IMG/VR virus record: IMGVR_UViG_3300032323_001214 | Location: 1 to 64,000 of that record | Reading direction: 5' to 3' (one strand) | Length of the DNA stretch: 64,000 bases | In this document: piece after piece, positions 918 to 54,011 of the stretch | Position numbering within the stretch: the first letter of the stretch is position 1 | Layout of the letters: each line of letters begins with the position of its first letter | Translations under genes and position numbers: made by a program | Notes under the pieces: generated by a model | What the model was told of the DNA's origin: nothing | Database searches by the model: none | The model's input: only the letters and a program-made list of their open reading frames with translations

Positions 918-995
918 TGGCTCCGTGATCTGGGATCGAACCAGACTCATTTCTGATTAACAGTCAGACGCCTACACCTTGCTTGCTCTCACGGA
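918..995 (-). tRNA. tRNA-Asn(GTT)
   Basis: TCCGTGA/TCACGGA acceptor, TCTGA-CTGTTAA-TCAGA anticodon arm, TTCGATC, GCCA. Confidence 0.92.
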
Positions 996-1882: not shown

Positions 1883-1911
1883 AGTATAACACCACATGCA
1901 TTTAATGTCAA
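1883..1911 (-). promoter_or_regulatory. sigma70-type promoter, 100 bp upstream of the previous one
   Basis: TTGACA, 17 nt spacer, TATACT with upstream TG. Confidence 0.8.
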
Positions 1912-2549
1912 ACTTGTGGTTTCCCTAAAAAGTTTTCACGTGTATAGCAGATATCTGAATACTTTTGTATACTAGATTCTAATAAATCGGATAACTTTTT
2001 TTCATCAGTAATCTTGCCTCTGATAACTCCTAGAATTTTAAAATTATCTGGATCAAAGCTTGCGCCATGCGAACAAGACTGATTGTTAAAGCAGAAGGTA
2101 TTAGTTGTCTCCGGTAGTGTAATGTAACGCTTTTTGTCTCCGTAGTCAATAAAAAAGGACTTCTTATCTTGTGCTATCACAAAGCGGAATCTAAAGTCTA
2201 GCCTCGTATCATACATTAGTTTGTCTTGATGAGGCGGAACATATTGAATATTTGACCACAAACTAATTGACTCTACTTCTAATGGGAGGTAGGAATTCAG
2301 TATCTCAACATCATCCTTTAAAAAGTCTGACATATCAATAAATGTACCCACATGCATCAACATTTCGGGTGTAAAAGTAGGTCCTTTATAACATGTTAGT
2401 CCTTTCCAAAACACCGGAAGATTTGGGTCGGTTGGTTTTGATATATTGCTAGCATGTTCTTTGTACAGTTCAACGATACTGTCACGGTTCTTTAATGGTA
2501 AATTTGGAATGTTTAAAGGTGAGTACAAAACATTATCAAAGTTTATCAT
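1908..2549 (-). CDS. putative Fe(II)-dependent cupin/DSBH oxygenase
   Basis: PPHQD (HxD) and distal FCFNNQSCSHGA His. Confidence 0.55.
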   Translation of the reverse strand: MINFDNVLYSPLNIPNLPLKNRDSIVELYKEHASNISKPTDPNLPVFWKGLTCYKGPTFTPEMLMHVGTFIDMSDFLKDDVEILNSYLPLEVESISLWSNIQYVPPHQDKLMYDTRLDFRFRFVIAQDKKSFFIDYGDKKRYITLPETTNTFCFNNQSCSHGASFDPDNFKILGVIRGKITDEKKLSDLLESSIQKYSDICYTRENFLGKPQV

Positions 2550-2793
2550 GGCTATATCTTTCTTTTACAGACTCTTTGAACGAATTTACAAATGCATGAA
2601 TGATGGGTGCAAATCTTTTGTTTTGTTCAAGACTTACTTCTTCGCATAAATTCATACAATCATCTAATAATAGTTGAGCAAACGCTTCTATTTCTGTTTC
2701 TCTATTTACTAGTTCTGTGCTCAGGTCATTGACTACAGACCAGCTGGTGCTTGACATTGCTTGATCGGCTAATTTTTTTAAAGTATCGTTCAT
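2536..2793 (-). CDS. hypothetical protein
   Basis: 85-aa ORF tightly packed in the operon. Confidence 0.6.
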   Translation of the reverse strand: MNDTLKKLADQAMSSTSWSVVNDLSTELVNRETEIEAFAQLLLDDCMNLCEEVSLEQNKRFAPIIHAFVNSFKESVKERYSHDKL

Positions 2794-3393
2794 TTATCTA
2801 TCTATAATTATGTTTTGTGTTTTAAGGTGCTCTACTGCTTCATCCCATGTTAAATCATGTATACTTGTTCTTGCACTTATACACCATCTGGATTCATTGC
2901 CAACTGATAGAGAGTGCGGATAATCTGTTCTTACTAAAGTAGGTTCATTTGGCATTATTGAACATCTATCTATTTCTACCAAGTCTTTTATAGGCCAACT
3001 TAAAATTTTATTATTTCCAGGGACTAATTTAATATTTTTCTCACCCGGCGGAAGATCATACCATATCATCTCGCTTCCTGCACCCCCGAAGACCAAGTTA
3101 AAACCAAAATGTGTGCTTTGCGTAGGTGCCCCGACTTCACTGACCAAATCTACATGTGCTTCAGTGTCTACTAAATTAGCCTCTCTATAAAATACAACTG
3201 ATCTATTTATGGGTAATGCAACATCATTCATATATTTTACCCAATCAGTCTCAAAAATTTTATCTGCTTTAAATGACCATACCCCAACGTATCCGGAAAA
3301 TTGTCGGGGGTCAGGAAATTGCCAATCTTTTGATATTGCATTTTCTATATTTAAATTTAGTCTATACCAGCATTTTCTCATATTATTCCCCAT
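2794..3393 (-). CDS. putative Fe(II)/2OG-type DSBH oxygenase
   Basis: EAHVD...TLVRTDYPHS...RWCISAR pattern. Confidence 0.65.
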   Translation of the reverse strand: MGNNMRKCWYRLNLNIENAISKDWQFPDPRQFSGYVGVWSFKADKIFETDWVKYMNDVALPINRSVVFYREANLVDTEAHVDLVSEVGAPTQSTHFGFNLVFGGAGSEMIWYDLPPGEKNIKLVPGNNKILSWPIKDLVEIDRCSIMPNEPTLVRTDYPHSLSVGNESRWCISARTSIHDLTWDEAVEHLKTQNIIIDR

Positions 3394-4333
3394 ATGAAAA
3401 TGATTTTTTAGAAAAATGATCTATGTTTTTAATTAATCTATTAACAACTGTATACTTTGTATGTTCGTGTAATTTTAAATTAATTTGATTAATTTCTTCA
3501 GTTCTATATTTTTCGTGGCCTGTAAATTTATCACGTTTGGTCATTTTATAAAAATGGAACACTTTGTACTTTAATATAGGGCTATTAAAATTCCAAAAGC
3601 CAAGTTCATTGTATTCTTTATTTGGATCAATGTTTTTAGTAAAATCATTAACATAGTTAATATATAGGTTTCCTGTTTCCCTAAAGAAATTAGAGCAACC
3701 ATCCATATTATTCATTGCTAAAAACTTATTCCATGAATTTTGAAACTCATAGTCTGCATGATAGACTATCCCGTTATATCTATAAATTTGTGGATCACCG
3801 TGGCCAATTATTGGATAGTAATTTTTATCATACATCATTTCCATCAATCGTGTAATCTGTGACATAGTAACATAACTTAAATTATGTTTCACACAATAAT
3901 CAAAACACTCTTGTGAACGATACCATTTAATAGTTTCTAAATTAATAATCTCTATGTTTAAATTATGCGTGTTAACAAAGTCATCAACAAATACAGTATC
4001 ACATTTGTTCTGATCTACATCATATACTGCATGTATGCAATGAAAATCTTCACCTGATTTGTAACCCAATTCTAAAAACGCATTTAGAATAATTTCACTG
4101 TCAATACCACCTGAATAAAATATACAAGGTGTTCTATTAACTAGTTTTGCCTTATTGACTAGTTGATTAACTGTTTCTAATAACCCTTCATGTATTCCTA
4201 CTGTAGGTACTTTGTAGTCGTAATGTACACAAAATTTATCATCTACACTTTTACGTGTAAAAATGTTCTTGTCATCATTATAGAAACATTGATAAAATTT
4301 ATGCATCACATAACCTATAAATTTCTTGTTCAT
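3383..4333 (-). CDS. PP-loop ATP pyrophosphatase (asparagine synthetase-like superfamily)
   Basis: IFYSGGIDSE motif; paralog of 8238..9158. Confidence 0.7.
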   Translation of the reverse strand: MNKKFIGYVMHKFYQCFYNDDKNIFTRKSVDDKFCVHYDYKVPTVGIHEGLLETVNQLVNKAKLVNRTPCIFYSGGIDSEIILNAFLELGYKSGEDFHCIHAVYDVDQNKCDTVFVDDFVNTHNLNIEIINLETIKWYRSQECFDYCVKHNLSYVTMSQITRLMEMMYDKNYYPIIGHGDPQIYRYNGIVYHADYEFQNSWNKFLAMNNMDGCSNFFRETGNLYINYVNDFTKNIDPNKEYNELGFWNFNSPILKYKVFHFYKMTKRDKFTGHEKYRTEEINQINLKLHEHTKYTVVNRLIKNIDHFSKKSFSYGE

Positions 4334-5432
4334 CTCTACGTAGTTGTTCTTGGTCAGTATTGATTAGAATAACTTCCCCTGGGATAGATGCTAGTGTTTT
4401 CGTGTTGACAGGCAACGTTTCAAAGAATGAATAGTGTTGGAACAACATACTGAATGATGGTAATTTGCTAAACTCCTGCCATGGAAACTCAGAAAATTTT
4501 CTTTCCCTATGGTTGAATAAATTAATTCGTTCCATATTTGCTTTTTTATTATATATCGGTGTCAAATCATCAAACTTTGATTCATTTCTTAAAAAAGCAT
4601 CGACTGTTAATTGTATTTGAGGTTGTGTTAATATTTTAAATGATGATGCGTAATCCAAATGACCATGCGTTCTGAAGTTAGCTTCAATTAATTTGAGTGC
4701 TCCATCCCCTATCATAATTTCAGTATGACATGCTCCGGTGACGTAATTTACTTTGTCTAACATATTACAAGTATATTCATATAAACGTTTAATTAATTCT
4801 TCATTTCCAACATAGTCTAGTAATATAGTTTTTTCTCTCCAAAATCCATTAGCTTTAGCATAAGTCCAGACAGAAACTAACTTATGTTTACCATTCATTG
4901 ACACTGTATCAACTACATACTCATTGCCTTTTATATATGGCATTATGAACATATCCGTTGTATCTACATCATCCATTGATTCTACTACGCTAATTCTGTC
5001 ATAACCACCGTGACTGATTTTAGGTTTAACTACACACTTTTTATATCGATTTAAAAACTCATCAAAGTTTGTATCAGATGCAGGTTCTCCTATAGCACAT
5101 AGTACGTCATATCTATTTGTTATTATTTTGTTATTGACACCGAGACCTAATAGTTCGTTCAAATGATTACTCAATACTTGTCCATTATCTGATCCGGGAA
5201 AACAGCATATGATATCATCTTTATACTTTGCTAAATCAGCAAGGATTTGATTGTCTGAATCGTAAATCAGACATGTCTCATATATGGTATTGTTTAGGGA
5301 TTTATAGAGTTTTTGAAATACGTGTTTGGATGAGTATATATTAATTACACGATACCCGCGATTAACAAACTCGTATGCCAGACTGTTTCCAGCAAGTACT
5401 ACGTCAATTATCAATGCATATTGTGTTTTCAT
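4299..5432 (-). CDS. ATP-grasp ligase
   Basis: VVKP..SHGG, EYVVDTVS, HTE...LIEANFR motifs. Confidence 0.85.
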   Translation of the reverse strand: MKTQYALIIDVVLAGNSLAYEFVNRGYRVINIYSSKHVFQKLYKSLNNTIYETCLIYDSDNQILADLAKYKDDIICCFPGSDNGQVLSNHLNELLGLGVNNKIITNRYDVLCAIGEPASDTNFDEFLNRYKKCVVKPKISHGGYDRISVVESMDDVDTTDMFIMPYIKGNEYVVDTVSMNGKHKLVSVWTYAKANGFWREKTILLDYVGNEELIKRLYEYTCNMLDKVNYVTGACHTEIMIGDGALKLIEANFRTHGHLDYASSFKILTQPQIQLTVDAFLRNESKFDDLTPIYNKKANMERINLFNHRERKFSEFPWQEFSKLPSFSMLFQHYSFFETLPVNTKTLASIPGEVILINTDQEQLRRDEQEIYRLCDA

Positions 5433-5438
5433 AGCAAC

Positions 5439-5446
5439 TATTTATA
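5439..5446 (-). promoter_or_regulatory. T4-type late promoter
   Basis: TATAAATA 6 nt before the ATP-grasp ATG. Confidence 0.65.
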
Positions 5447-5468
5447 GAAATAATTGCATGAAAAAAAA

Positions 5469-5879
5469 TTATGAGAATAGCTGATTTGCAGTAACGTAGT
5501 CTGTTTCATTTATAATGTCAATAGTTTCTTGTTCGACTACAGTTAAGATAATACCAGTAGCGTCTAAAAATTTAGCTCTGGCCTTTAAAAAAGTGGTATG
5601 TGCTGGTGAGGTATTCCAAGCGTCAAACCTATCTTTGTCAGCATAATATGTTAAGGTAATTTTATCTAAACTATTTGCATCTTCTACCCAAACATAATTA
5701 GTTACACAGTTTAAACTCTCTATTTCAGGTCTTGCCTCAATAACAGCTATTGCATATTCCGTTTCTGCATCAGTTGTCTCTGGTAATGACAAATAATCCA
5801 TTGGTTTTCTATAGGTTACCTCACCGTTTGCTGTCCATTTACACGCTACTAAATACATAAATAACTCCTTATTATACAA
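5469..5879 (-). CDS. hypothetical protein, possible ABM-type monooxygenase fold
   Basis: FDAWNTSPAH resembles the WxxSxxH motif of ABM/IsdG proteins; TTG start. Confidence 0.4.
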   Translation of the reverse strand: MYNKELFMYLVACKWTANGEVTYRKPMDYLSLPETTDAETEYAIAVIEARPEIESLNCVTNYVWVEDANSLDKITLTYYADKDRFDAWNTSPAHTTFLKARAKFLDATGIILTVVEQETIDIINETDYVTANQLFS

Positions 5880-5892
5880 GAGTATTTATCTT

Positions 5893-6681
5893 TTATTCAG
5901 CATCTTTAAATACTCTTATGAACCATCCTGAAGGATCAATTTCCCACCATTTGATCCCAAAATCATAATTACCAGGACGACCATGATGATTATTATGCCA
6001 ACATTCACCTAGTACGAGTGGCCATAACCATATGACATTTTTACTGTTATCTCGGGTCACAAAGTTAGTATATCCGTAATTTGAATGATTTAGGCAATTT
6101 GTTAGATTGTACGTAATCAGCGTGACCAATGCAGGAAGTATGCTAAAAAATAACAAGAATTCAATACTTATTAATCCAAATATAATGTTTGATGTTAGCC
6201 AAATTTTAGTATAATGAGTACTAAACCACATTATGTCTTTATTACGCATCGTGTCAACAGCATATCTAAAACTAATAGCATCCGATTTAATCCTAAACAT
6301 CCACAAAAATATGCTATGCCAAAATCCGTGAATAGGGCTGTGAGGATCTGTTATTGTATCTGGCTTTCTATGATGGTATCCCCTATGTAGTGCTACCCAC
6401 CAAATAGGACTTCCCTGCCCACTAAGTGTTGAAGCATATAACATTAAAATCTCTTTCCACCTAGCTGCCTTAAAAGATTTATGACTAAAATATCGATGTA
6501 GCCCTGCAGTTACTCCGATGATGTTAATAAAGAAGTAACCCAAACATACCAACAATAACTTATACCAAGTAAATTCAATTATCAACGATCCAGCTGCTAT
6601 AGATCCTAATATTATAATAGGCAACGTAATTATAAGAAGACTAGGATTTTCTTTAAGATTTTTAAGAATAGGGTTGAACAT
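5893..6681 (-). CDS. membrane fatty acid desaturase-like protein (delta-9 family)
   Basis: His boxes HRYFSH, HRGYHH, HNNHH; DPHSP; transmembrane segments. Confidence 0.9.
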   Translation of the reverse strand: MFNPILKNLKENPSLLIITLPIIILGSIAAGSLIIEFTWYKLLLVCLGYFFINIIGVTAGLHRYFSHKSFKAARWKEILMLYASTLSGQGSPIWWVALHRGYHHRKPDTITDPHSPIHGFWHSIFLWMFRIKSDAISFRYAVDTMRNKDIMWFSTHYTKIWLTSNIIFGLISIEFLLFFSILPALVTLITYNLTNCLNHSNYGYTNFVTRDNSKNVIWLWPLVLGECWHNNHHGRPGNYDFGIKWWEIDPSGWFIRVFKDAE

Positions 6682-6685
6682 TACA

Positions 6686-7372
6686 CTATTTATGCTTTAA
6701 CGGCGGGTCATTCTTAATTCTATGTGCATAATGTAAATCGAGTGACATTAGCATTACGGGACGTATAAAACGTTTTGGAATAATATTCTTAAATGCCTTA
6801 AATTTATAATTATCAATGTCTTCCTGACTATTGAATATCTTTTCAATTATGAAATCATACTTAACTGCAGGTATGGTTTTAGAAAATATATTTAATGCAT
6901 AGTCTTTTGCTTGTGATGATTCTGTAATTCTTAAAGCTTTTTTAGTGGCTTTTATAACTATAAAACCCTTAGTATATTGCTGACCTTCAAATTGTTCTAG
7001 CATCAACTTTTCAATAGAAAAGAAATCATCATGTGGGGATTTCCAGGAACTACTAGTTTTATACCATAATCCTACTACCCAATAGGGTAATACATCTTCT
7101 GCCTTTTTTCTATGCCAAGCAATTTCAATTTTGTATCCTACCATTATTTCATCTATTTCTCCATCAGTAAATCTAGCTGATACTACAAAATCTTTGGGAG
7201 AAACTTCTAAGAATAGTTGTCGTAACCAATCAGCAAACTTCTTAATATCTTCATAGTAATATATAGGGTTAGGAGCAATAGATTCATGTTCTACATATTG
7301 TATCAATATTTGATTAAAATGCTCAACGTCAGCTAAATCATTGGGGTCAAGCAATTTGTAGGTGGTAGTCAT
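6686..7372 (-). CDS. hypothetical protein, possible GNAT-like fold
   Basis: Distant similarity to 9937..10509 (YWVVGLWY/FWVISALY; KYDF/RYDC). Confidence 0.45.
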   Translation of the reverse strand: MTTTYKLLDPNDLADVEHFNQILIQYVEHESIAPNPIYYYEDIKKFADWLRQLFLEVSPKDFVVSARFTDGEIDEIMVGYKIEIAWHRKKAEDVLPYWVVGLWYKTSSSWKSPHDDFFSIEKLMLEQFEGQQYTKGFIVIKATKKALRITESSQAKDYALNIFSKTIPAVKYDFIIEKIFNSQEDIDNYKFKAFKNIIPKRFIRPVMLMSLDLHYAHRIKNDPPLKHK

Positions 7373-7397
7373 ATTATTTTACAGTGTATAGTGGCAG

Positions 7398-7405
7398 TAT
7401 AAATA
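7398..7405 (+). promoter_or_regulatory. T4-type late promoter
   Basis: TATAAATA 4 nt before the Rieske ATG. Confidence 0.65.
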
Positions 7406-7409
7406 TTTA

Positions 7410-8246
7410 ATGTTTACATCTACCCCTAAAATATTTGCTCATGTATCATCTGTAAATAAAGGTAACTTTGTATTACCTGAAGTTATACTCAACAAAGCTG
7501 ACAACGGAGTAAACTTATTTCATAGATTTTGCCCACATAGAATGTATCCACTACATAATACCGGAGAACATGTAGAAAATATCGTATGTAAATTTCACAA
7601 CTTTGAATGGGATAAAGATGGTAATCCTTTAAATAATCCTAAAAAGTTAAAATGCGGAACCGCTGAAGTGGGACGATCCGGATTAGTATTTAAAGATTTT
7701 ATTGAACCTGATCATCAATGGGTAGATGATTTAGCAAAAGAAACAGAATTGGTGTATAGTCATTCTTTTCAAGGAGAAAGTAAAGGAAGCTGGCTATGGT
7801 TAATGGATGCTGAAGCAGATTTGTTACATTTATACAAAGGTGGTATACATCCTTTTTTATCTCAGCAAATAGAGCTAAATGATATTGTACTTGACCAGGG
7901 CGATGGATGGATACTTCAACATCACCCAAATGGCTGGTGGTTATATATATTCCCCTTTACTTTTGTAGAATACAGCAGACCAGGATGTGTTATGGTTAAT
8001 ACAGTTATACCTGATAATATAGATACTGAGTATGGATTTAAATGGATTACACAATTTTACTATAGCAAAGATATACATCCCAATACTCGTATGATATTTG
8101 AAACACTAGAAACTGTCTTTAAAGAAGATGTTGCTACAGCAGAATTACAAAAGGGAAATTACTTTCCGTTAACGAAGGCGATGAACCGATATGAGGATCA
8201 TTGCGTATATTTTGGCAATTGGGTTAAAAATAATAAATTAAAATAA
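7410..8246 (+). CDS. Rieske non-heme iron oxygenase (ring-hydroxylating alpha-subunit-like)
   Basis: CPH...CKFH Rieske ligands; DLLH....IH and EDVATAE mononuclear Fe ligands. Confidence 0.88.
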   Translation: MFTSTPKIFAHVSSVNKGNFVLPEVILNKADNGVNLFHRFCPHRMYPLHNTGEHVENIVCKFHNFEWDKDGNPLNNPKKLKCGTAEVGRSGLVFKDFIEPDHQWVDDLAKETELVYSHSFQGESKGSWLWLMDAEADLLHLYKGGIHPFLSQQIELNDIVLDQGDGWILQHHPNGWWLYIFPFTFVEYSRPGCVMVNTVIPDNIDTEYGFKWITQFYYSKDIHPNTRMIFETLETVFKEDVATAELQKGNYFPLTKAMNRYEDHCVYFGNWVKNNKLK

Positions 8247-9158
8247 CTCAGTTAACTCATTGTAGGTGAACCAGTATTCGTTTCCTTCTCCTACTACTGC
8301 GGTCATATAATCTTGCATTTTATTAATATATTCTGGATATACTCCGGTAAAGTTATCCCCTTCATAACCTGTTAATTTATGTTTATATTTAATATCAGGC
8401 CATATCTCTGAATGTATGGGAGTTCTACTAGTCCAACAACTTAATTTGCCCGGTAATTTATCATTTAGTAAATCTTGTATTAATGGTAATTCATTAAATG
8501 CTTTAATCAGATTGGGGTTAAATTCATACCAATCACATACATTTGGTCTACCAATAGATTGTAGATACATAGATGAATTATGATTGGCTTCATTTAAAGG
8601 GAATATCCAATTAGATTTTTGGCTATAATCTCTTTGTAATACACGTGACCAATATGGTTCAGCATCTCCCATTACCGGTATGTTGTCTATATAATCAAAG
8701 AATTTTATATGAGGTAAACGTCCGGCTCTGATGCAACCGCTCTTTTGAAATACATCATATGCTTCAGCCTCAAAGAATTTTTCTAAATTAAAATCTATAA
8801 TTTTATAGGGAATATTTAAACATGTGGCAATTTCTACTGCTGATGTTACATCTCGGTGGTTTATGTTATTTTCATATTTGAAAATATATGTATTATGTGT
8901 TATCTTTAAATCTTTAAAAGTACGTACTACTACTTCGCTATCAATACCACCAGATAATAATACATCAAATGTACCCACATGGTAATCTCTCATCAACCTA
9001 GCGTTATTATACAATTCTTCTTTATAGGATTTTACAGGCTTGGTTATAGTTGAAGTGTTTATGTTTAATGTATAAACATCATCTTTGCTTTTACGTAATC
9101 CAAAAGGTACATCATTAAAGCTCCATGTTAACCAACCATTAAAGGTAGACATGCTCAT
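8238..9158 (-). CDS. PP-loop ATP pyrophosphatase (asparagine synthetase-like superfamily)
   Basis: VLLSGGIDSE motif; shared K-x-T-G-x-E C-terminal motif with 3383..4333. Confidence 0.7.
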   Translation of the reverse strand: MSMSTFNGWLTWSFNDVPFGLRKSKDDVYTLNINTSTITKPVKSYKEELYNNARLMRDYHVGTFDVLLSGGIDSEVVVRTFKDLKITHNTYIFKYENNINHRDVTSAVEIATCLNIPYKIIDFNLEKFFEAEAYDVFQKSGCIRAGRLPHIKFFDYIDNIPVMGDAEPYWSRVLQRDYSQKSNWIFPLNEANHNSSMYLQSIGRPNVCDWYEFNPNLIKAFNELPLIQDLLNDKLPGKLSCWTSRTPIHSEIWPDIKYKHKLTGYEGDNFTGVYPEYINKMQDYMTAVVGEGNEYWFTYNELTELF

Positions 9159-9934
9159 GTTGTCTTAATTAATTTAATAATGAGTCCGGATATATCTAAT
9201 TCCCACCATTGTTTTCTAAAGGTATAATCTCTAGGAAATCTATGATGATTGTTATGCCATGCTTCACCCCAACTAGGTATAGACCATAACCAATTATTTG
9301 ATGATTGGTCATTAAGATTATATGAACGATATCCACCTAACCAATTTGGTTTATGTCCTACATAGTTAACGACATTACTCATAAGTCCTGTAATTAATGC
9401 AGGGGTCCAATGAAGGAATATCATTAACCAAAAACCACCAATGGCAAACAATATTATACTATATAAAGCAATTATTGCAAAGTAATAACGATGTAGGAAC
9501 TGTTGGAATGTATCAGTCACTAATTTCCTCATTCTCCATTTAGTATCATTGTTTACTTCATTAACATAATCAAGTGAGAATATCTTTATACCTTTATATA
9601 AAGGGCTATGCGGGTCATCGGGTTTATCACTTTTTAAATGATGATTAATGTGAATTGCTACCCAAGCAAGTGGGCTTCCTGTGCCAGCAAAACATCCTAA
9701 TATTGAAAATAATTTAGTAAATAATGGGTTTGTTTTATAGCTACGATGTGTTAATTGTCTATGATATGTGACTACTATTCCTAAACATCCATACAAAAAA
9801 TAACCCAATAGAATTAATAATATTGCGTTTAATGATACTCCATATACAATAGTGGCAAGTATCGTTCCTATCAATGATAGTATCATAAAAGCTTGGGCGC
9901 CGCGGGTACTTGATGCTAGGTATTTCATTAACAT
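9155..9934 (-). CDS. membrane fatty acid desaturase-like protein
   Basis: HRQLTH, HINHH, HNNHH; DPHSP. Confidence 0.9.
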   Translation of the reverse strand: MLMKYLASSTRGAQAFMILSLIGTILATIVYGVSLNAILLILLGYFLYGCLGIVVTYHRQLTHRSYKTNPLFTKLFSILGCFAGTGSPLAWVAIHINHHLKSDKPDDPHSPLYKGIKIFSLDYVNEVNNDTKWRMRKLVTDTFQQFLHRYYFAIIALYSIILFAIGGFWLMIFLHWTPALITGLMSNVVNYVGHKPNWLGGYRSYNLNDQSSNNWLWSIPSWGEAWHNNHHRFPRDYTFRKQWWELDISGLIIKLIKTT

Positions 9935-9936
9935 AT

Positions 9937-10509
9937 TTATCTAAAATTAGGTCGCAACACTCTTTTTTTTATGATTACGTTATCTGGTTTTATTTCTTTG
10001 CCTAATAATTTCCAATATAAATCAACTGTTGGCTTGGTATTTGCAGGAACAATGTCTAATTGAATACAATCATATCTACCCGTCGTAATATATTTGTTTT
10101 TTCTATATTGACTCTCATAAACGGATGCAATTCTTTCACTAACAGAATAGTAATATTCGTAGTATTTCTTTGATTCCGCTATGTGGAAGGCTTCTTTAAT
10201 TAACAATCCTATTTCTTCTTGGTTAAAAGAAAAATATTTTGTAAACTTTGTGGTATATAATGCACTAATCACCCAGAATCTACCTCGGGTTTTGTTTTCC
10301 ATTAACACGATCCCTAACCAGCTAACTATTTTGCCATCTTCTATACAGCCTAATGCATAGTAATTATCATTCTCAATAAAATATTTTGTACAGATTTCTA
10401 TTAATGCTTCTTCTGACAGTGGTTTGGATCCGCCTACTCTGGGCCGTAGTTTGGCTATACCCAAACAATCAGCCAAATGAACATCACCTAATAATCTTTC
10501 TACTTTCAT
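9937..10509 (-). CDS. hypothetical protein, possible GNAT-like fold
   Basis: GNAT-like beta-hairpin (ALGCIEDGKIVSWLG), followed by WVISALYT and an AFHIAE helix. Confidence 0.5.
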   Translation of the reverse strand: MKVERLLGDVHLADCLGIAKLRPRVGGSKPLSEEALIEICTKYFIENDNYYALGCIEDGKIVSWLGIVLMENKTRGRFWVISALYTTKFTKYFSFNQEEIGLLIKEAFHIAESKKYYEYYYSVSERIASVYESQYRKNKYITTGRYDCIQLDIVPANTKPTVDLYWKLLGKEIKPDNVIIKKRVLRPNFR

Positions 10510-11267
10510 TTATTGCTTTTTAATAGTGAAATTATTAGTGACAGTGGGTCAAACTCAAATGATTTAACCTTAGTAGATATTCTGTCAGCGTGAGCATGGT
10601 GATTATTATGCCATGCATCCCCTAAAATAAATGGCCACAAATATATATTGTTTGTACTGTGGTCTCTAGTCTCATAGTTTCTGTGCCCGTACATATGAGC
10701 AAAGTAATTAAATGCTATTTGTGAGATACTTACTAAAAATACAGGTAATGCCCACATATAAAAAATTAAATTTACATTTATTAGTCCCAGCAATACTATA
10801 TATGTTGCTATTAATAGCATGTAATACTTATCTATATTAATATGTGCAGGTGTCAATAATTCTTTCACAATAAAATAGTTAATAGGTTTGGTGTCATCAT
10901 ATATTGGTCTAAAACCTATAAATTTAAAAGTGGTATAGTGAGGACTATGAGGGTCTTTTTCAGTATCGCTTGTCGCATGGTGTAATCTATGAATATAAAC
11001 CCAACCAATTGGACTTCCCCTACCTGCTAATACAGCAAATATAGTAAAGAACCATTTAACTACAGAATGTAATTTAAAGCTCTTATGACTATAATATCTA
11101 TGTAACATCATACTTACTCCAAAAATACTATAACAATAAAAGGTAACAATAGCAGTAATAGTGTATATCCAAGATATATCCACAAAAAACATACCAAATA
11201 ATATAGTCACTAAGGATAATATTTGTAGCATGAAAAGTGATTTAGGAGTAGCAGATAAATGTTTCAT
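10506..11267 (-). CDS. membrane fatty acid desaturase-like protein
   Basis: HRYYSH, HRLHH, HNNHH; DPHSP. Confidence 0.9.
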   Translation of the reverse strand: MKHLSATPKSLFMLQILSLVTILFGMFFVDISWIYTITAIVTFYCYSIFGVSMMLHRYYSHKSFKLHSVVKWFFTIFAVLAGRGSPIGWVYIHRLHHATSDTEKDPHSPHYTTFKFIGFRPIYDDTKPINYFIVKELLTPAHINIDKYYMLLIATYIVLLGLINVNLIFYMWALPVFLVSISQIAFNYFAHMYGHRNYETRDHSTNNIYLWPFILGDAWHNNHHAHADRISTKVKSFEFDPLSLIISLLKSNK

Positions 11268-11743
11268 AATGTAATTAACCCTTTGTGTATTAAGTGTGTT
11301 TTTATTGTGTCAAAAGTTATAAAATGATTAACATGTATGTTAAGCAAATATCTAGTATGAACAGTGGAGTTGTTCCTTACATTATGGGGTAATGCAGTGT
11401 TTATTAAACAAGGAACATCAGTAGAATAAGGTATGTCATATTCTATATTATCTATTATCATTTTTCCTATATACTCTGGTCGTTGTTCAGTCAATAATTG
11501 ATTTATTGCACAATTTCTTGTGTTATCTATATGGAACTTATACTCCCATTCAGGTGGGGTTTTATATACACCTACCTGCAGGTCTAAATCATAATAATCA
11601 CATATCATAAGGTTTAACTCTTTTGGAACAGTTGCACGAAACAACTGATTGAATGTTGTCTTATAATTTAAAGAATTATAAATTTCTTTTAATTCACTTA
11701 GACACACTGGTGATTCATTTAATAATATCCAACCTTTATTCAT
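11264..11743 (-). CDS. putative DSBH oxygenase
   Basis: FHID...INTALPHNV...RYLL. Confidence 0.65.
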   Translation of the reverse strand: MNKGWILLNESPVCLSELKEIYNSLNYKTTFNQLFRATVPKELNLMICDYYDLDLQVGVYKTPPEWEYKFHIDNTRNCAINQLLTEQRPEYIGKMIIDNIEYDIPYSTDVPCLINTALPHNVRNNSTVHTRYLLNIHVNHFITFDTIKTHLIHKGLITL

Positions 11744-11748
11744 ATAAT

Positions 11749-12336
11749 TTACTTGCCTAATAATAGATCACTGGTATCTATAACGTCTTCTAATTTTCTA
11801 AAGAGAGTTTTATCTAGCGGCCATCTTACAGTAAACATAACTCTATACTCGTCTGAATCATTGCGCACACTATGTAGTATTGAGTTATTCATTACATATG
11901 GACGAATGACTTCTATTTCTTCTCCTATAAGTTTTAGTTTAGCCTGATCTTTAACTAGCCAAGCAGATAGATAACCATCAGGGGAAGTAGCGTATATATT
12001 ATCTTTTGGGGTATCATAATAACAGTGATATGTATTCTGTGTACCAATGATTGGAATATTAATACCAAACGGCGAGGTTGGATCAACACCGTCTATATGT
12101 GCCTCAAGTGATGTATGCGGTGGGGTAATATAATATCGAAATATTCTAATAGGAGCTTTGACTTTTGGCATAAGCCATGTCATAAATTTGGGACAATGCT
12201 CTGTCATATACGTAGCAGAGTACGAAAAAGCATGAGTACCGACCACTGCTTTATAATCTCGGTCTATTGCATTCAATAATTCAACTTGGATTTCTTCCAA
12301 ATTTGGAATAGTAAATGGTATAGCTAATTCATTCAT
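11749..12336 (-). CDS. putative DSBH oxygenase
   Basis: AHIDG...GINIP...NNSILHSV...RVMFTVR. Confidence 0.7.
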   Translation of the reverse strand: MNELAIPFTIPNLEEIQVELLNAIDRDYKAVVGTHAFSYSATYMTEHCPKFMTWLMPKVKAPIRIFRYYITPPHTSLEAHIDGVDPTSPFGINIPIIGTQNTYHCYYDTPKDNIYATSPDGYLSAWLVKDQAKLKLIGEEIEVIRPYVMNNSILHSVRNDSDEYRVMFTVRWPLDKTLFRKLEDVIDTSDLLLGK

Positions 12337-12345
12337 AGTTATATT

Positions 12346-12357
12346 TATTTATAAATA
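12346..12357. promoter_or_regulatory. bidirectional T4-type late promoter
   Basis: Palindrome TATTTATAAATA gives TATAAATA on both strands within a 27-bp divergent gap. Confidence 0.7.
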
Positions 12358-12363
12358 ATATCT

Positions 12364-12975
12364 ATGTATAATAAAACATACAATTCACTGAGCAAAAAAG
12401 AAAAAGATCATTTCTTTGAATATCTACAATCTATAAAAGCCACAAATACCCAAGCCTATACCAATATGTGGAATGATAATTGGATGAATGAGGTTCATAC
12501 GCTTCCCTATGTACTTGAAAAAACAGACAGATTTAACGAAATTAACGGTGAATTTCACATCATATACAATGATTCAGATATTGTCGCATGTGGTGGTGTA
12601 TATAGAAGTCACTTCAGCGAGTCAGTGGGTATAGGTGGTGTACGTACTTGGACTAACGACAAATATAGACACCAATCGTTGTTGCGTGATTTTTTGTTAC
12701 CACTGCACAAATCTTGGTGTATAGAACATAATATAAAAATGATTGTGTTGTCTTTTAATGAGTATAATAAGAATCTAATCCAGGTGTTTAAACGTAGAAG
12801 ATTTGGTGAACAAAAAGATCGGATCAACAGTAGACAACCTCATCATTTATTTTATAACGGAATGGGTGAACCAAAGTTTCCGGTTATAATTCAGCATACA
12901 AAACAATGGATAATTTATGAAAAATTAGATCCATCGTTTGACTTTGACTGGACTACCATCAAATGCAAACTCTAA
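12364..12975 (+). CDS. GNAT-like acyltransferase
   Basis: IVACGGVY...RTWTNDKYRHQSL resembles GNAT motif A. Confidence 0.6.
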   Translation: MYNKTYNSLSKKEKDHFFEYLQSIKATNTQAYTNMWNDNWMNEVHTLPYVLEKTDRFNEINGEFHIIYNDSDIVACGGVYRSHFSESVGIGGVRTWTNDKYRHQSLLRDFLLPLHKSWCIEHNIKMIVLSFNEYNKNLIQVFKRRRFGEQKDRINSRQPHHLFYNGMGEPKFPVIIQHTKQWIIYEKLDPSFDFDWTTIKCKL

Positions 12976-13361
12976 AATATCATCATTTGTTAAATATATC
13001 TGTAAATCATTTTATAAAAAATATTGAGGTGATACCCAAATTACCTAAAAATACTGACATATTTGTATCTAAATGTGATACAAAATTATTTTTACATGAA
13101 GGTGTATATAGCAAACTCTCTGAATTAGATCGGTTATCTAGTCTAATGTTTTTTATGACACCCGAATCCGATAAAAAAAATATTCATGTTGATTATAAGA
13201 CAAACAACTTTACTTTGCTTAATGTTTTAAAGCCACACGGCATAGAAAATAAAAATACTGAAAAGGAAAAAATAGTGCTATCTATGGGATTCAAGAATCA
13301 TGCATACAGTACTATGAGAGAAATGCATTATAAAGGAGAGTTGCTAAATGGTGTTATATAA
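12963..13361 (+). CDS. DSBH oxygenase-like protein, probably internally deleted
   Basis: IHVD followed within about 15 aa by LNVLKPHGI; central strands present in paralogs are missing. Confidence 0.5.
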   Translation: MQTLKYHHLLNISVNHFIKNIEVIPKLPKNTDIFVSKCDTKLFLHEGVYSKLSELDRLSSLMFFMTPESDKKNIHVDYKTNNFTLLNVLKPHGIENKNTEKEKIVLSMGFKNHAYSTMREMHYKGELLNGVI

Positions 13362-13908
13362 AAAATTAAACGTTGACAACTTTGAACAAATGCGAGTAGA
13401 GTTAGAATTAGCAACAACTGACAGAGTTATACAAAATACAAGATACTGGGGAGAACCTTATAAATGGTTTAAAGAAAACGCACCAACGTTCTATAACTTT
13501 GTAGAAAGTAAAAGAAAAATTTCTACTAGATTTTGTAGATTTTATCTAACTCCCCCAAATAGTAGTCTGCAGCCACACATTGATGGCACCAGTTCTTATA
13601 GATCACCGATTGGATTAAATATCCCTATATCGGGTTATGAGGGTAGTACAATGGATTGGTATATTTGCCCGAATGATAATTTTGATGATGGACATCATGG
13701 ATTTGAAAATATCCCTGCTAGTAAAGTTATAGACTTTACTAAATTAGAAAAAATAGATTCAACTGTTATTGATTGTCCTACATTTGTTAGAACTGATGTT
13801 GTTCACGGGATCGATAATTACAAATATACTAATAGACTAGTACTAAGTATAAGATTTCCGTATACTAAAATATTTGGTCAAAAATTTGAAGATGTTTGGA
13901 AATTTTAA
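13348..13908 (+). CDS. putative DSBH oxygenase
   Basis: PHIDG...GLNIP...RTDVVHGI...RLVLSIR; close paralog of 11749..12336. Confidence 0.7.
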   Translation: MVLYKKLNVDNFEQMRVELELATTDRVIQNTRYWGEPYKWFKENAPTFYNFVESKRKISTRFCRFYLTPPNSSLQPHIDGTSSYRSPIGLNIPISGYEGSTMDWYICPNDNFDDGHHGFENIPASKVIDFTKLEKIDSTVIDCPTFVRTDVVHGIDNYKYTNRLVLSIRFPYTKIFGQKFEDVWKF

Positions 13909-53912: not shown

Positions 53913-53930
53913 TAGATATTTATGCCCAAT

Positions 53931-53955
53931 AAAAAAGAGCACCGAAGTGCTCTTT
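53931..53955 (-). terminator. intrinsic terminator after the major capsid gene
   Basis: AAAGAGCAC-TTCG-GTGCTCTTTTTT with UUCG tetraloop. Confidence 0.9.
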
Positions 53956-54011
53956 GATTCCTTCCCGTAACACAGACCGTAGTCTGTGCTCTCGAACAAG
54001 AAGATTTCGAT

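What the first reader, a model, noticed from the sequence alone, without database searches (positions are those of the whole stretch)
1908..13908. 12-kb late-expressed island resembling a biosynthetic or modification gene cluster
Seen in sequence: 18 contiguous ORFs that are visibly more AT-rich than the capsid and RNR genes. They encode 3 divergent membrane desaturase-like enzymes, a Rieske oxygenase, an ATP-grasp ligase, 2 SGGIDS PP-loop ATPases, 3 GNAT-like proteins, 6 HxD...H cupin oxygenases and a possible ABM-fold protein. Exact T4 late promoters (TATAAATA) precede several transcription units (5439, 7398, 12346). Established: these families carry out desaturation, hydroxylation, amide ligation, adenylation and acyl transfer. 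Inference: the island is a phage pathway making an oxidised acyl-amide or lipid product, or decorating virion proteins or the host envelope late in infection. No ACP, acyl-AMP ligase or obvious precursor peptide is present in the window, so it does not match a textbook cluster.
Basis: partly seen in the sequence, partly recalled or inferred. Interest (0 to 1): 0.75.

Follow-up and report, generated by a model that had tools for sequence, protein, structure and literature searches.

The report
Jumbo-phage oxygenase and amide-ligase gene island
An uncultured freshwater jumbo phage carries a conserved, selectively maintained 12-kb block of iron oxygenases, membrane fatty-acid-desaturase paralogs and ATP-dependent amide-forming ligases; the same gene combination occurs in predatory Bdellovibrio-like bacteria, it most likely remodels membrane lipids, and its product is unknown.

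Summary
The island is real. There are 18 contiguous ORFs at 1908-13908, and this is the lowest-GC 12 kb of the 249.6-kb virus record. Verified families:
- three catalytically intact membrane di-iron desaturase paralogs
- a Rieske oxygenase
- two asparagine-synthetase/beta-lactam-synthetase-class PP-loop ligases without a glutaminase domain
- an L-amino-acid-ligase-type ATP-grasp
- two weakly supported GNATs
- four 2OG/Fe(II) cupins plus one truncated remnant

One HxD...H protein, a third GNAT and the ABM fold are unverified.

The refutation tests fail. Co-occurrence is conserved: Rieske and PP-loop genes are adjacent in 44 of 44 viral loci, and a desaturase lies within 10 kb in 24. A desaturase-GNAT-desaturase-PP-loop order is conserved. 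dN/dS is about 0.03-0.15. The combination of PP-loop, desaturase, multiple AspH-like cupins and radical SAM also occurs in Bdellovibrionota genomes, there with a fatty-acid hydroxylase.

IscU and AhpC/AhpD genes flank the island. A T4-late-like nATAAATA motif, shared with structural genes, precedes six island genes.

Best reading (about 0.4): late oxidative and amide-forming remodelling of a membrane lipid. The substrate, the product and expression are not shown. No GenBank phage carries the Rieske or PP-loop protein.

The parts
1908..2549 (-). o1, 213 aa. Conserved family with invariant H107-x-D109...H161...K171. Cupin-like by motif only.
   Evidence: Family present in 10 of 44 viral loci. 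Invariant residues. No Pfam, PDB or profile link. dN/dS about 0.03.
2536..2793 (-). o2, 85 aa, unknown. Found only in near relatives.
   Evidence: No family hit. An 85-aa ortholog occurs in L059-L062. dN/dS 0.14-0.28.
2794..3393 (-). o3, 199 aa, 2OG/Fe(II) cupin paralog.
   Evidence: hhalign to the o15/o18 family gives 94.5% probability, E 7.5e-8. Ortholog found only in L062.
3383..4333 (-). o4, 316 aa, second PP-loop (SGGIDS) AsnB-class ligase paralog.
   Evidence: Pfam ATP_bind_3 below cut-off. hhalign to the o10 family gives 98.5% probability over 250 columns.
4299..5432 (-). o5, 377 aa, ATP-grasp of the L-amino-acid-ligase type.
   Evidence: Pfam ATP-grasp_3, 24.9 bits. NCBIfam PRK07206 3e-40 and DdaF 2e-11, both below cut-off. 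PDB L-amino acid ligase 3.7e-10. Narrow family of about 30 metagenomic proteins.
5469..5879 (-). o6, about 129 aa (probable start at 5858), unknown. The ABM fold was not tested.
   Evidence: No hit in any library. Orthologs in L059-L062, dN/dS 0.16-0.34.
5893..6681 (-). o7, 262 aa, membrane di-iron desaturase paralog.
   Evidence: Pfam FA_desaturase 2.6e-13. His boxes invariant. Three hydrophobic segments.
6686..7372 (-). o8, 228 aa, ORFan family, divergent from the Rieske gene.
   Evidence: 30 metagenomic homologs, none with a Pfam domain in this family. No link to the GNAT profiles or to PDB. dN/dS 0.09.
7410..8246 (+). o9, 278 aa, compact Rieske non-haem iron oxygenase (alpha-subunit type).
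   Evidence: Pfam Rieske, 33.5 bits. Invariant C41-x-H43, C60-x2-H63, D137, H140, H147, D240 and D263. Best PDB relative is carnitine monooxygenase CntA, 1e-6. 45 viral loci.
8238..9158 (-). o10, 306 aa, PP-loop adenylating enzyme of the asparagine-synthetase/beta-lactam-synthetase class. It has no glutaminase domain and is convergent with the Rieske gene.
   Evidence: AF2 model pLDDT 94. VIA Z 15-16 to Asn synthetases, 13.5 to beta-lactam synthetase, 12.5 to carbapenam synthetase. Foldseek. ESM Atlas. 282 homologs, all unnamed.
9155..9934 (-). o11, 259 aa, membrane di-iron desaturase paralog. Its stop overlaps the o10 start.
   Evidence: Pfam FA_desaturase 1e-18. Alignment. TM segments.
9937..10509 (-). 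o12, 190 aa, GNAT-like protein lying between two desaturase genes.
   Evidence: Profile against PDB hits N-acetyltransferases at 9e-4 and 0.023. Atlas neighbours are virus-only clusters, some carrying Acetyltransf_1. The Desat-o12-Desat order is conserved in L003, L012, L030, L059 and L061.
10506..11267 (-). o13, 253 aa, membrane di-iron desaturase paralog. Its stop overlaps the o12 start.
   Evidence: Pfam FA_desaturase 1.3e-12. Alignment. Four hydrophobic segments.
11264..11743 (-). o14, 159 aa, 2OG/Fe(II) cupin paralog.
   Evidence: hhalign to the o15/o18 family gives 89.4% probability, E 2e-6.
11749..12336 (-). o15, 195 aa, 2OG/Fe(II) oxygenase with a double-stranded beta-helix fold.
   Evidence: Invariant H80, D82, H155, R165. 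AF2 model pLDDT 88. Foldseek hits: proline 3-hydroxylase, AspH, OlsC. The family links to Asp_Arg_Hydrox-positive relatives at 95.9%.
12364..12975 (+). o16, 203 aa, GNAT-like protein.
   Evidence: ESM Atlas neighbours by features and by structure are GNAT acetyltransferases. PDB profile hits to acetyltransferases are weak, 0.063. Present in 11 of 44 viral loci.
12963..13361 (+). o17, 132 aa, shortened cupin remnant. The HxD and distal His are only about 15 residues apart.
   Evidence: Sequence. hhalign 60% over 28 columns. Only 58% coverage in relatives, dN/dS 0.33.
13348..13908 (+). o18, 186 aa, 2OG/Fe(II) cupin, paralog of o15.
   Evidence: BLASTP 31% identity to o15, 1.5e-21. Alignment A2.
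13940..15018 (-). Flanking support genes: an AhpD-like CMD protein (13940-14479) and the AhpC peroxiredoxin (14479-15018).
   Evidence: Pfam CMD 1.8e-14 and AhpC-TSA 1.9e-21. The same position holds AhpC/CMD or rubrerythrin plus rubredoxin in L011, L012, L059, L061 and L062.
15384..15773 (-). Flanking IscU/NifU_N Fe-S cluster scaffold.
   Evidence: Pfam NifU_N, 175.6 bits. Conserved next to the island in relatives.
5439..5446 (-). T4-late-like promoter motif TATAAATA, 6 nt upstream of the o5 start. Related nATAAATA motifs lie at 5883-5889(-), 6687-6693(-), 7398-7405(+), 12346-12353(-) and 12350-12357(+).
   Evidence: Exact matches. Genome-wide, 54 of 85 nATAAATA copies lie within 100 nt upstream of starts in the correct orientation, including large structural genes.
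53202..53999 (-). Fourth desaturase, near-orthodox DesA type, next to the major head gene and outside the island.
   Evidence: BLASTP paralog. NCBIfam DesA_fam 387.5 bits against a cut-off of 400, compared with 71-101 bits for the island copies.

Best explanation
The island is a conserved accessory operon set of an uncultured freshwater jumbo myovirus. It most likely acts on a membrane-embedded lipid of the infected cell.

Shown:
- Three integral-membrane di-iron enzymes of the stearoyl-CoA/DesA desaturase type with complete metal-binding His boxes.
- These are translationally coupled with a GNAT-like acyltransferase and with an asparagine-synthetase/beta-lactam-synthetase-class PP-loop enzyme that lacks a glutaminase domain.
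- A convergent Rieske oxygenase, four 2OG/Fe(II) hydroxylase-fold proteins, a second PP-loop paralog and an L-amino-acid-ligase-type ATP-grasp.
- An Fe-S scaffold (IscU) and a peroxiredoxin pair (AhpC/AhpD) next door.

Inferred mechanism:
- The desaturase paralogs, cupins and Rieske enzyme desaturate or hydroxylate acyl chains or head groups, using O2 and host reductant.
- The GNAT, PP-loop and ATP-grasp enzymes make amide bonds: acyl transfer to an amine, and ATP-dependent adenylation of a carboxylate followed by attack of an amine. The result would be an oxidised amide-linked (amino)lipid or a modified envelope lipid.
- IscU supplies the clusters and AhpC/AhpD removes the peroxides that uncoupled iron oxygenases produce.
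- Transcription is probably late, from a T4-late-like nATAAATA promoter.
For: Families and catalytic residues.

Only the desaturases are membrane proteins. The start and stop codons of o13/o12 and o11/o10 overlap by 4 nt, and o12/o11 are 2 nt apart.

Conserved neighbourhood:
- A PP-loop gene accompanies the Rieske gene in 44 of 44 non-redundant viral loci. It is the direct neighbour of 31 of 41 Rieske genes, and the long PP-loop family c2 is the direct neighbour of 9.
- Desaturases lie within 10 kb in 24 of 44 loci.
- The order Desat-GNAT-Desat-(rSAM)-PP-loop-Rieske is kept at 46-77% identity.

Independent cellular context:
- PP-loop homologs in Bdellovibrionota MAGs sit within 10 kb of desaturase homologs (16 of 45 loci).
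- They also sit near up to 5-6 AspH-like cupins, radical SAM genes, GNATs and a Pfam FA_hydroxylase of 98.6 bits.
- Four of those genomes have no phage major capsid homolog.

Other support:
- The cupin model's best Swiss-Prot structural neighbour is OlsC, the ornithine-lipid acyl 2-hydroxylase.
- Purifying selection, dN/dS 0.03-0.15.
- IscU and AhpC/AhpD flank the island, and relatives have rubrerythrin/rubredoxin in the same place.
- The promoter motif is shared with structural genes.
- Phage Delta9 lipid desaturases are an experimentally shown auxiliary function (PMC5776448).
Against: - No substrate-defining enzyme is present: no ACP, acyl-AMP ligase, acyltransferase of known lipid pathways or head-group synthase.
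- No ferredoxin or reductase partner was found in the record.
- The island desaturases score far below the DesA equivalog cut-off (71-101 bits against 400), so their reaction may not be fatty-acid desaturation.
- The cupin fold matches free-proline hydroxylases and protein hydroxylases about as well as it matches OlsC.
- 18 of 45 Rieske loci show no desaturase within 10 kb, and a near relative (L062) lacks the Rieske gene.
- Seven of the 18 ORF families are restricted to close relatives.
- No expression data exist.
- A Rieske/PP-loop complex prediction gave no answer.
Confidence: 0.4

Rival explanations
1. A biosynthetic cluster for a soluble small molecule, for example an amide, beta-lactam-like or carboxylate-amine conjugate, possibly iron-related. 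It would be built by the AsnB/beta-lactam-synthetase-class ligases, the L-amino-acid ligase and the GNATs, and tailored by oxygenases.
For: - The closest structures of the PP-loop protein include beta-lactam synthetase and carbapenam synthetase.
- The ATP-grasp is of the L-amino-acid-ligase/DdaF type.
- Relatives add B12-type and SPASM radical SAM enzymes, TauD, SAM synthetase and TctC/DctP solute-binding proteins.
- PP-loop paralogs reach five in tandem in L056.
- In Bradyrhizobium the homolog sits beside a glutamine-synthetase-like ligase.
Against: - No scaffold-forming enzyme (NRPS, PKS, CarB-like crotonase, NIS synthetase) and no carrier protein.
- The membrane-embedded desaturase paralogs are among the best-conserved partners and are translationally coupled to the ligase.
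- The cellular counterpart adds a fatty-acid hydroxylase.
Confidence: 0.2
2. No single pathway. The region is a hypervariable accessory hot spot in which independent auxiliary genes (membrane-fluidity desaturases, redox and peroxide defence, assorted hydroxylases) accumulate and duplicate.
For: - Lowest GC of the genome.
- Mosaic identity to relatives: o8-o14 are 84-93% identical to L061, o1-o7 only 49-82%.
- Seven ORF families are found only in close relatives.
- Gene content differs between loci, and AhpC/CMD is swapped for rubrerythrin/rubredoxin.
- There is a truncated cupin remnant.
Against: - Strict adjacency of the Rieske and PP-loop genes in 44 of 44 loci.
- Conserved gene order and overlapping stop/start codons.
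- The same combination of families recurs in Bdellovibrionota at 25-45% identity.
Confidence: 0.18
3. Post-translational modification of peptides or virion proteins (RiPP-like). This would involve hydroxylation by AspH-like cupins and ligation or cyclisation by the ATP-grasp and AsnB-like enzymes (as in graspetides and lasso peptides), with radical SAM tailoring in relatives.
For: - The cupin family is related to Asp/Asn beta-hydroxylases.
- SPASM and B12 radical SAM genes occur in relatives, and the same genome has an 11-gene radical SAM array.
- The promoter motif is shared with structural genes.
Against: - No recognisable precursor peptide; the only small ORF (o2) is helical and is not conserved beyond near relatives.
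- Lasso cyclases and graspetide ligases have partner proteins that are absent here.
- Three membrane desaturases have no place in such pathways.
Confidence: 0.12
4. Modification of tRNA or DNA bases by the PP-loop enzymes (QueC, TilS or MnmA-like), with oxidative tailoring.
For: - Weak QueC, TilS and MnmA hits to the PP-loop motif region.
- An 8-gene tRNA array lies directly beside the island.
- GTP cyclohydrolase I lies near the Rieske/PP-loop pair in 8 loci and is present in this genome.
Against: - The hits cover only about 60 residues around SGGxDS and are far below the equivalog cut-offs (23 against 150 bits for QueC).
- The whole-protein fold matches Asn synthetase at Z 15-16, against 9 or less for MesJ/TilS and the tRNA thiolases.
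- Membrane desaturases and GNATs are unexplained.
Confidence: 0.05

Closest known systems
Cyanophage-encoded Delta9 lipid desaturases (vFADs; Roitman et al. 2017, PMC5776448)
   Same: A phage-borne membrane di-iron desaturase of the same Pfam family with the same His-box architecture. Its proposed role is remodelling of host membrane lipids during infection.
   Different: Those are single genes of T4-like cyanophages with shown Delta9 activity. Here there are three strongly diverged paralogs (about 30% identical to each other, 71-101 bits against the DesA model) plus a fourth near-orthodox copy elsewhere. The three are embedded in an operon with ligases and other oxygenases. Only three weak tblastn matches were found in GenBank phages.
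Ornithine-lipid and lipid A tailoring enzymes: OlsB (GNAT-like N-acyltransferase), OlsC/LpxO (AspH-family 2OG hydroxylases), OlsE (fatty-acid-hydroxylase family). The roles of OlsB and OlsE are recalled from my own knowledge.
   Same: The same combination of enzyme superfamilies acting on an amide-linked membrane lipid. OlsC is the best Swiss-Prot structural neighbour of the o15 model. The Bdellovibrio counterpart carries a FA_hydroxylase gene.
   Different: No sequence-level membership: Asp_Arg_Hydrox scores are below cut-off in the window's proteins. No OlsA, OlsB or OlsF homolog was identified. PP-loop, Rieske and ATP-grasp enzymes are not part of those pathways.
Asparagine synthetase B, beta-lactam synthetase and carbapenam synthetase (class II amidotransferase synthetase domain)
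   Same: SGGxDS PP-loop. The whole-protein fold matches at Z 12.5-15.8 over 250-270 residues. The implied chemistry is carboxylate adenylation followed by attack of a nitrogen nucleophile.
   Different: About 300 aa with no Ntn glutaminase domain. About 11-13% identity. No Pfam Asn_synthase hit. A virus-dominated family with several paralogous subfamilies.
Rieske monooxygenases of the CntA / GbcA / SxtT group
   Same: A Rieske CxH...CxxH cluster plus a conserved D-x2-H...H and acidic ligands. The best PDB match is CntA, 1e-6, over both domains.
   Different: Much shorter (278 aa against 330-450). Unusual H-x6-H spacing. No cognate reductase in the record. No homolog in 50,697 GenBank phages or, by pattern scan, in 185,579 species genomes.

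Membership tests
Membrane di-iron fatty-acid desaturase (Pfam FA_desaturase, SCD/DesA type) | Pfam score above the gathering cut-off | tested here: met
   50.7, 68.5 and 48.5 bits against a cut-off of 29.7.
Membrane di-iron fatty-acid desaturase (Pfam FA_desaturase, SCD/DesA type) | His boxes HxxxxH, HxxHH, NxxxH and HxxHH all present | tested here: met
   H52, H57, H89, H92, H93, H195, H224, H227 and H228 (numbered on the 53202 copy) are invariant in 12 sequences.
Membrane di-iron fatty-acid desaturase (Pfam FA_desaturase, SCD/DesA type) | Transmembrane helices flanking the His boxes | tested here: met
   3-4 hydrophobic 19-mers in each of the three proteins and none in the other 15 island proteins.
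DesA-family fatty acid desaturase (NCBIfam NF049918 equivalog) | Score at or above the equivalog cut-off of 400 bits | tested here: not met
   The island copies score 70.9, 101 and 97.3 bits. The copy at 53202-53999 scores 387.5 bits.
Rieske non-haem iron oxygenase, alpha subunit | [2Fe-2S] ligands CxH...CxxH | tested here: met
   C41, H43, C60 and H63 are invariant in 8 sequences. Pfam Rieske scores 33.5 bits against a cut-off of 20.3.
Rieske non-haem iron oxygenase, alpha subunit | Mononuclear iron site (two His and one carboxylate) in a C-terminal catalytic domain | tested here: inconclusive
   D137, H140, H147, D240 and D263 are invariant, and the alignment to CntA spans both domains. However, the His spacing is 6 rather than 4, and no catalytic-domain Pfam model hits.
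Rieske non-haem iron oxygenase, alpha subunit | A cognate reductase or ferredoxin encoded nearby | tested here: not met
   No Fer2 match in the 249.6-kb record. Relatives carry a 42-aa rubredoxin-like ORF.
Asparagine synthetase / beta-lactam synthetase class PP-loop enzymes | SGGxDS pyrophosphate-binding loop | tested here: met
   S69, G70 and G71 invariant and D73, S74 nearly invariant in 46 sequences. SGGIDS in both window proteins.
Asparagine synthetase / beta-lactam synthetase class PP-loop enzymes | Fold of the synthetase domain | tested here: met
   VIA Z 15.2-15.8 to Asn synthetases, 13.1-13.7 to beta-lactam synthetase and 12.2-12.6 to carbapenam synthetase, well above LarE and NAD synthetase at about 10.
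Asparagine synthetase / beta-lactam synthetase class PP-loop enzymes | N-terminal Ntn glutaminase (or glutaminase-like) domain of about 200 aa | tested here: not met
   The protein is 306 aa, and only about 60 residues precede the PP-loop.
Asparagine synthetase / beta-lactam synthetase class PP-loop enzymes | Pfam Asn_synthase match | tested here: not met
   No PF00733 match in the genome. TIGR01536 scores 18.8 bits against a cut-off of 267.
QueC (7-cyano-7-deazaguanine synthase) | Full-length match at equivalog level | tested here: not met
   TIGR00364 scores 23.2 bits against a cut-off of 150.3, and the match covers residues 66-127 only.
ATP-grasp L-amino-acid ligase | ATP-grasp domain above cut-off and similarity to characterised ligases | tested here: met
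   ATP-grasp_3 scores 24.9 bits against a cut-off of 23.2. A PDB L-amino acid ligase matches at 3.7e-10 over residues 166-368. The DdaF equivalog cut-off is not reached, 43.5 against 840.
GNAT acyltransferase | GNAT fold or profile match | tested here: inconclusive
   The o12 family hits PDB N-acetyltransferases at 9e-4. The o16 family hits at 0.063, and its Atlas structural neighbours are GNATs with TM 0.63-0.80. No Pfam hit. o8 is not linked. The acyl-CoA-binding motif was not examined.
2OG/Fe(II) oxygenase (AspH / LpxO / OlsC-like cupin) | HxD...H facial triad plus a basic residue for 2OG | tested here: met
   H80, H155 and R165 invariant and D82 nearly invariant in 16 sequences.
2OG/Fe(II) oxygenase (AspH / LpxO / OlsC-like cupin) | Double-stranded beta-helix fold | tested here: met
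   The o15 model has pLDDT 88. There are 353 PDB matches at E<=0.001, all top ones 2OG oxygenases.
2OG/Fe(II) oxygenase (AspH / LpxO / OlsC-like cupin) | Pfam Asp_Arg_Hydrox above cut-off | tested here: not met
   o15 scores 17.8 bits against a cut-off of 22.6. It is met in related viral and Bdellovibrio proteins, 23.2 and 33.6 bits, which link to the o15 family at 95.9%.
Textbook biosynthetic gene cluster (NRPS, PKS, fatty-acid or RiPP type) | Carrier protein, scaffold synthase or precursor peptide | tested here: not met
   No PP-binding domain in the record. No such Pfam or NCBIfam hit among the 18 ORFs.
T4-type late transcription unit | TATAAATA-type element upstream of the genes, shared with structural genes | tested here: met
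   Exact octamers precede four island starts. 54 of 85 nATAAATA copies lie upstream of starts, including the 990-1731-aa structural genes.
T4-type late transcription unit | gp55/gp33-type late sigma apparatus, and late timing of the transcripts | not tested
   No search for gp55/gp33 was made. No RNA run was listed.

The most novel reading that the evidence does not exclude
Jumbo phages and predatory Bdellovibrionota share a previously undescribed pathway. AsnB-class ligases without a glutaminase domain, diverged membrane desaturase paralogs and multiple Fe oxygenases would build or re-tailor an oxidised, amide-linked envelope lipid. In the phage the same ligases are paired with a compact Rieske oxygenase known so far only from viral contigs. 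Two kinds of bacterial killer would thus be using the same chemistry on the Gram-negative cell envelope.
Probability: 0.2. Interest if true: 0.85.

Novelty: new variant of a known kind. Interest (0 to 1): 0.62.

Why it matters
Phage auxiliary genes for lipid metabolism are poorly understood, and only single Delta9 desaturases have been characterised. This is a multi-enzyme, selectively maintained cluster that recurs in at least 44 uncultured jumbo-phage contigs. Its Rieske and PP-loop proteins have no tblastn match in 50,697 GenBank phage records.

Its core pairs an uncharacterised, virus-dominated branch of asparagine-synthetase-like ligases with a compact Rieske oxygenase found only in viral contigs in the collections searched.

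A matching gene combination in Bdellovibrionota gives an independent handle on function and a culturable system in which to test it. If the product is a modified envelope lipid or a new metabolite, it would extend what phages are known to synthesise and would provide new oxygenase and ligase chemistry.

Tried and rejected
- **megablast against GenBank phages.** Neither the island nor its flank gave a match.
- **PHROGs.** Only one family of unknown function, for the desaturases.
- **ATP-grasp pattern scan of viral contigs.** No relatives.
- **Genome scan with the Rieske profile.** No cellular relative.
- **Rieske plus PP-loop complex prediction.** No answer; it is not used as evidence either way.
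- **RNA-seq look-up.** No run was listed, so expression is untested and read laying was not used.
- **Exact-protein look-up of the Bdellovibrio homolog.** Not on record.
- **Sigma-70 promoter and terminator scans.** Counts equal the shuffle expectation.
- **QueC or tRNA-modifying identity for the PP-loop proteins.** Considered and rejected on score, coverage and fold.
- **Linking o1 to cupins and o8 to GNATs.** Profile-profile, Pfam-on-members and PDB profile searches all failed.
- **Literature searches.** No description of this cluster was found.
- **Misbinned contigs.** The 'Neomarinimicrobiota' locus L102 was discounted as a misbinned phage contig (MCP 77% identical). The two short 'Nitrososphaerales' contigs are probably the same.

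Full report
**Setting.** The window is the first 64 kb of a linear IMG/VR virus record of 249,606 bases, with a CheckV completeness of 67%. One of its proteins was also seen on a 348,244-base contig.
- The major head protein (54012-55208) is 65% identical to those of jumbo myoviruses such as Pseudomonas phage PA5oct, Vibrio phage 2.275.O and Sinorhizobium phage Phosso.
- A portal protein and class Ia ribonucleotide reductase are present.
- DNA runs that hold the sequence are lake, freshwater and estuary metagenomes.

**Observation.** Eighteen ORFs fill 1908-13908 with almost no gaps.
- The stretch has 31.9% GC against a genome mean of 37.4% (sd 1.5% for 12-kb windows). It is the lowest-GC 12 kb of the whole record.
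- On the left lies an array of eight tRNA genes.
- On the right lie an AhpD-like CMD protein, the AhpC peroxiredoxin, a 100-aa ORF, IscU/NifU_N (175.6 bits), DUF2452 and a cell-wall hydrolase.

**Desaturases.** Three proteins (5893-6681, 9155-9934, 10506-11267) pass the Pfam FA_desaturase cut-off.
- They carry every metal-binding histidine of the stearoyl-CoA/DesA type, invariant across 12 divergent sequences.
- They are the only island proteins with transmembrane segments.
- They are about 30% identical to each other.
- They score only 71-101 bits on the NCBIfam DesA model, whereas a fourth copy beside the head gene (53202-53999) scores 387.5 bits.

**Rieske protein.** The 278-aa protein at 7410-8246 has invariant CxH...CxxH, plus D137, H140, H147 and downstream acidic residues. 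Its best solved relative is carnitine monooxygenase CntA.

**PP-loop proteins.** The two SGGIDS proteins (8238-9158 and 3383-4333) are full-length paralogs.
- A confident model (pLDDT 94) matches asparagine synthetases at Z 15-16, beta-lactam synthetase at 13.5 and carbapenam synthetase at 12.5. LarE, NAD synthetase and the tRNA enzymes reach about 10 or less.
- The glutaminase domain is absent.
- The weak QueC and TilS hits cover only the PP-loop motif.

**Other ligases and transferases.**
- The ATP-grasp (4299-5432) is of the L-amino-acid-ligase type.
- Two proteins (9937-10509, 12364-12975) are GNAT-like on weak but concordant evidence.

**Cupins.**
- The family of 11749-12336 and 13348-13908 has an invariant H..H..R with a nearly invariant Asp in the HxD position. 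A model of 11749-12336 (pLDDT 88) has the double-stranded beta-helix fold of 2OG oxygenases, and the family has a 95.9% profile link to Asp_Arg_Hydrox-positive relatives.
- 2794-3393 and 11264-11743 join this family at 94.5% and 89.4%.
- 12963-13361 is a shortened remnant.

**Not verified.** 1908-2549 has a conserved HxD...H...K but no detectable family link. 6686-7372 is an ORFan family. The fold of 5469-5879 could not be tested. 2536-2793 is unknown.

*Co-occurrence.*
- A pattern scan with the PP-loop protein and a profile scan with the Rieske protein brought in 53 IMG/VR loci.
- After removing duplicates, a PP-loop gene accompanies the Rieske gene in 44 of 44 loci. It is the direct neighbour of 31 of 41 Rieske genes, and a longer PP-loop family (c2, invariant SGGxDS) is the direct neighbour of 9.
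- Desaturases lie within 10 kb in 24 loci, TctC-type binding proteins in 22 and B12-type radical SAM enzymes in 14. The two GNAT families occur in 11 and 7 loci, and the cupin families in 9-11.
- The order desaturase-GNAT-desaturase-(radical SAM)-PP-loop-Rieske is kept at 46-77% identity. In the window these genes have overlapping or abutting stop and start codons.
- IscU and either AhpC/CMD or rubrerythrin/rubredoxin sit beside the island in the relatives as well.

*Integrity.* The catalytic residues are conserved, as listed above.

*Selection.* Against three relatives, dN/dS is 0.03-0.15 for most genes. Synonymous sites are partly saturated, so the ratios are rough.

*Not everything is core.* The ATP-grasp, o2, o3, o6, o8, o14 and o17 occur only in near relatives. 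Eighteen of 45 Rieske loci lack a detectable desaturase. One near relative lacks the Rieske gene.

**Cellular counterpart.** A genome scan with the PP-loop profile found 45 loci at 22-34% identity. Most are in Bdellovibrionota MAGs, and some are in Alphaproteobacteria.
- Sixteen loci also carry desaturase homologs within 10 kb.
- Eleven carry AspH-like cupins, with up to 5-6 copies.
- Several carry radical SAM and GNAT homologs. None has the Rieske protein.
- One Bdellovibrio locus adds a Pfam FA_hydroxylase (98.6 bits), an Asp_Arg_Hydrox protein (33.6 bits) and a PLP enzyme.
- Four such genomes have no homolog of the phage head protein, so these loci are cellular.
- A 'Neomarinimicrobiota' contig does have one (77% identity) and is a misbinned phage.
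- In Bradyrhizobium denitrificans the homolog stands beside a glutamine-synthetase-like ligase and a glycosyltransferase.

The recurrence of the same family combination in two unrelated genomic settings argues for a functional link, and for a lipid substrate.

**Promoters.**
- TATAAATA occurs at the stated positions. As an octamer it is rarer than chance, in the window (7 against 11.6) and in the genome (16 against about 46 by composition).
- TAAATA is 14-fold enriched upstream of starts.
- 54 of the 85 nATAAATA copies lie within 100 nt upstream of a start in the correct orientation. These include the 990-, 1091- and 1731-aa structural genes, and six island genes.
- There are two spacing classes: 15-27 nt with a Shine-Dalgarno sequence in between, and 4-9 nt, which would give nearly leaderless mRNAs. 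The island sites are mostly of the second class.
- Late timing is therefore an inference by analogy with T4. No RNA run was listed.

**Mechanism.** The best-supported reading is oxidative and amide-forming remodelling of a membrane lipid late in infection.
- Membrane-bound desaturase paralogs, 2OG hydroxylases and the Rieske enzyme would oxidise acyl chains or head groups.
- The GNATs, AsnB-class ligases and ATP-grasp would form amide bonds.
- IscU and AhpC/AhpD would support the iron enzymes.
- The nearest known logic is ornithine-lipid and lipid A tailoring, based on the OlsC structural match and on my own knowledge of OlsB and OlsE.
- None of the steps is shown. No acyl carrier, activating enzyme or ferredoxin is encoded in the record.
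- Rivals are a soluble natural product, peptide or virion-protein modification, a pathway-less hypervariable hot spot, and nucleic-acid modification. They are weighed in the report sections.

**Novelty.**
- The Rieske and PP-loop proteins have no tblastn match in 50,697 GenBank phage records. The desaturases have three weak matches.
- PHROGs knows only an unnamed desaturase family.
- The PP-loop family's 282 relatives are all unnamed, and its ESM Atlas clusters are 92-100% viral.
- Literature searches found only single phage desaturases (PMC5776448, PMC7678222).

I rate it a new variant of a known kind: a phage auxiliary or biosynthetic island.

Noticed in passing
G000:C1:108255-124184 (same genome, outside the window): Eleven tandem radical SAM genes (387-521 aa, all with CxxxCxxC), interrupted only by two SGNH/GDSL-like ORFs. 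By N-terminal motifs read by eye, no family search run: two glycosyltransferase-like ORFs upstream, and a carbamoyltransferase-like gene downstream. This is the second lowest-GC stretch of the record. In relatives, radical SAM genes sit inside the desaturase/PP-loop island.
   Followed up: partly
window 10-995: An array of eight tRNA genes (Lys, Arg, Glu, Ala, Pro, Gln, Asp, Asn) on the minus strand, directly left of the island.
   Followed up: no
window 53202-53999: A fourth, near-orthodox DesA-type desaturase lies immediately beside the major head gene and is preceded by the nATAAATA motif 4 nt upstream of an internal ATG at 53912, 87 nt inside the listed TTG-start ORF. It is the likely membrane-fluidity gene, distinct from the three diverged island copies.
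   Followed up: partly
genome-wide, e.g. window 5439-5446, 7398-7405, 40036-40042, 53917-53923: The promoter-like nATAAATA motif has two spacing classes from the start codon. The 4-9 nt class leaves no room for a Shine-Dalgarno sequence and implies nearly leaderless late mRNAs.
   Followed up: partly
L003-L058 (viral loci), e.g. L056:5451-11761: A third, longer PP-loop family (c2, about 390 aa, invariant SGGxDS) occurs in 28 of 44 loci. Up to five PP-loop genes stand in tandem around one Rieske gene. L018 has two Rieske and three PP-loop genes.
   Followed up: partly
L006, L023, L028, L042, L050, L056 (DctP) and L006-L030 (TctC): The phage-borne TctC-type binding proteins have signal peptides. 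The DctP-type ones have none, suggesting a cytoplasmic ligand-binding role. A DctP + c11 + PP-loop trio also occurs in an alphaproteobacterial MAG (L083).
   Followed up: no
window 13940-15018 compared with L011, L059, L061: At the same position next to IscU, some relatives carry rubrerythrin plus a 42-aa rubredoxin instead of AhpC plus AhpD-like CMD. This is an apparent functional swap of peroxide-handling modules.
   Followed up: no
L102, L063, L064: Contigs filed under a Neomarinimicrobiota MAG (335 kb; its genome holds a head protein 77% identical to the window's) and under a Nitrososphaerales MAG carry this island. They are probably misbinned jumbo-phage contigs.
   Followed up: partly
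window 21546-22232: An ORF with DUF4379 zinc-finger, CapR and T5orf172 domains, probably a homing-endonuclease-like mobile gene, lies between the structural and RNR genes.
   Followed up: no
G000:C1:243962-244522 and L010, L018, L020, L022, L026, L032, L036, L053: GTP cyclohydrolase I lies a few kb from the Rieske/PP-loop pair in eight viral loci. In this record it lies near the far end of the contig, which would be close to the island if the genome is circularly permuted.
   Followed up: no
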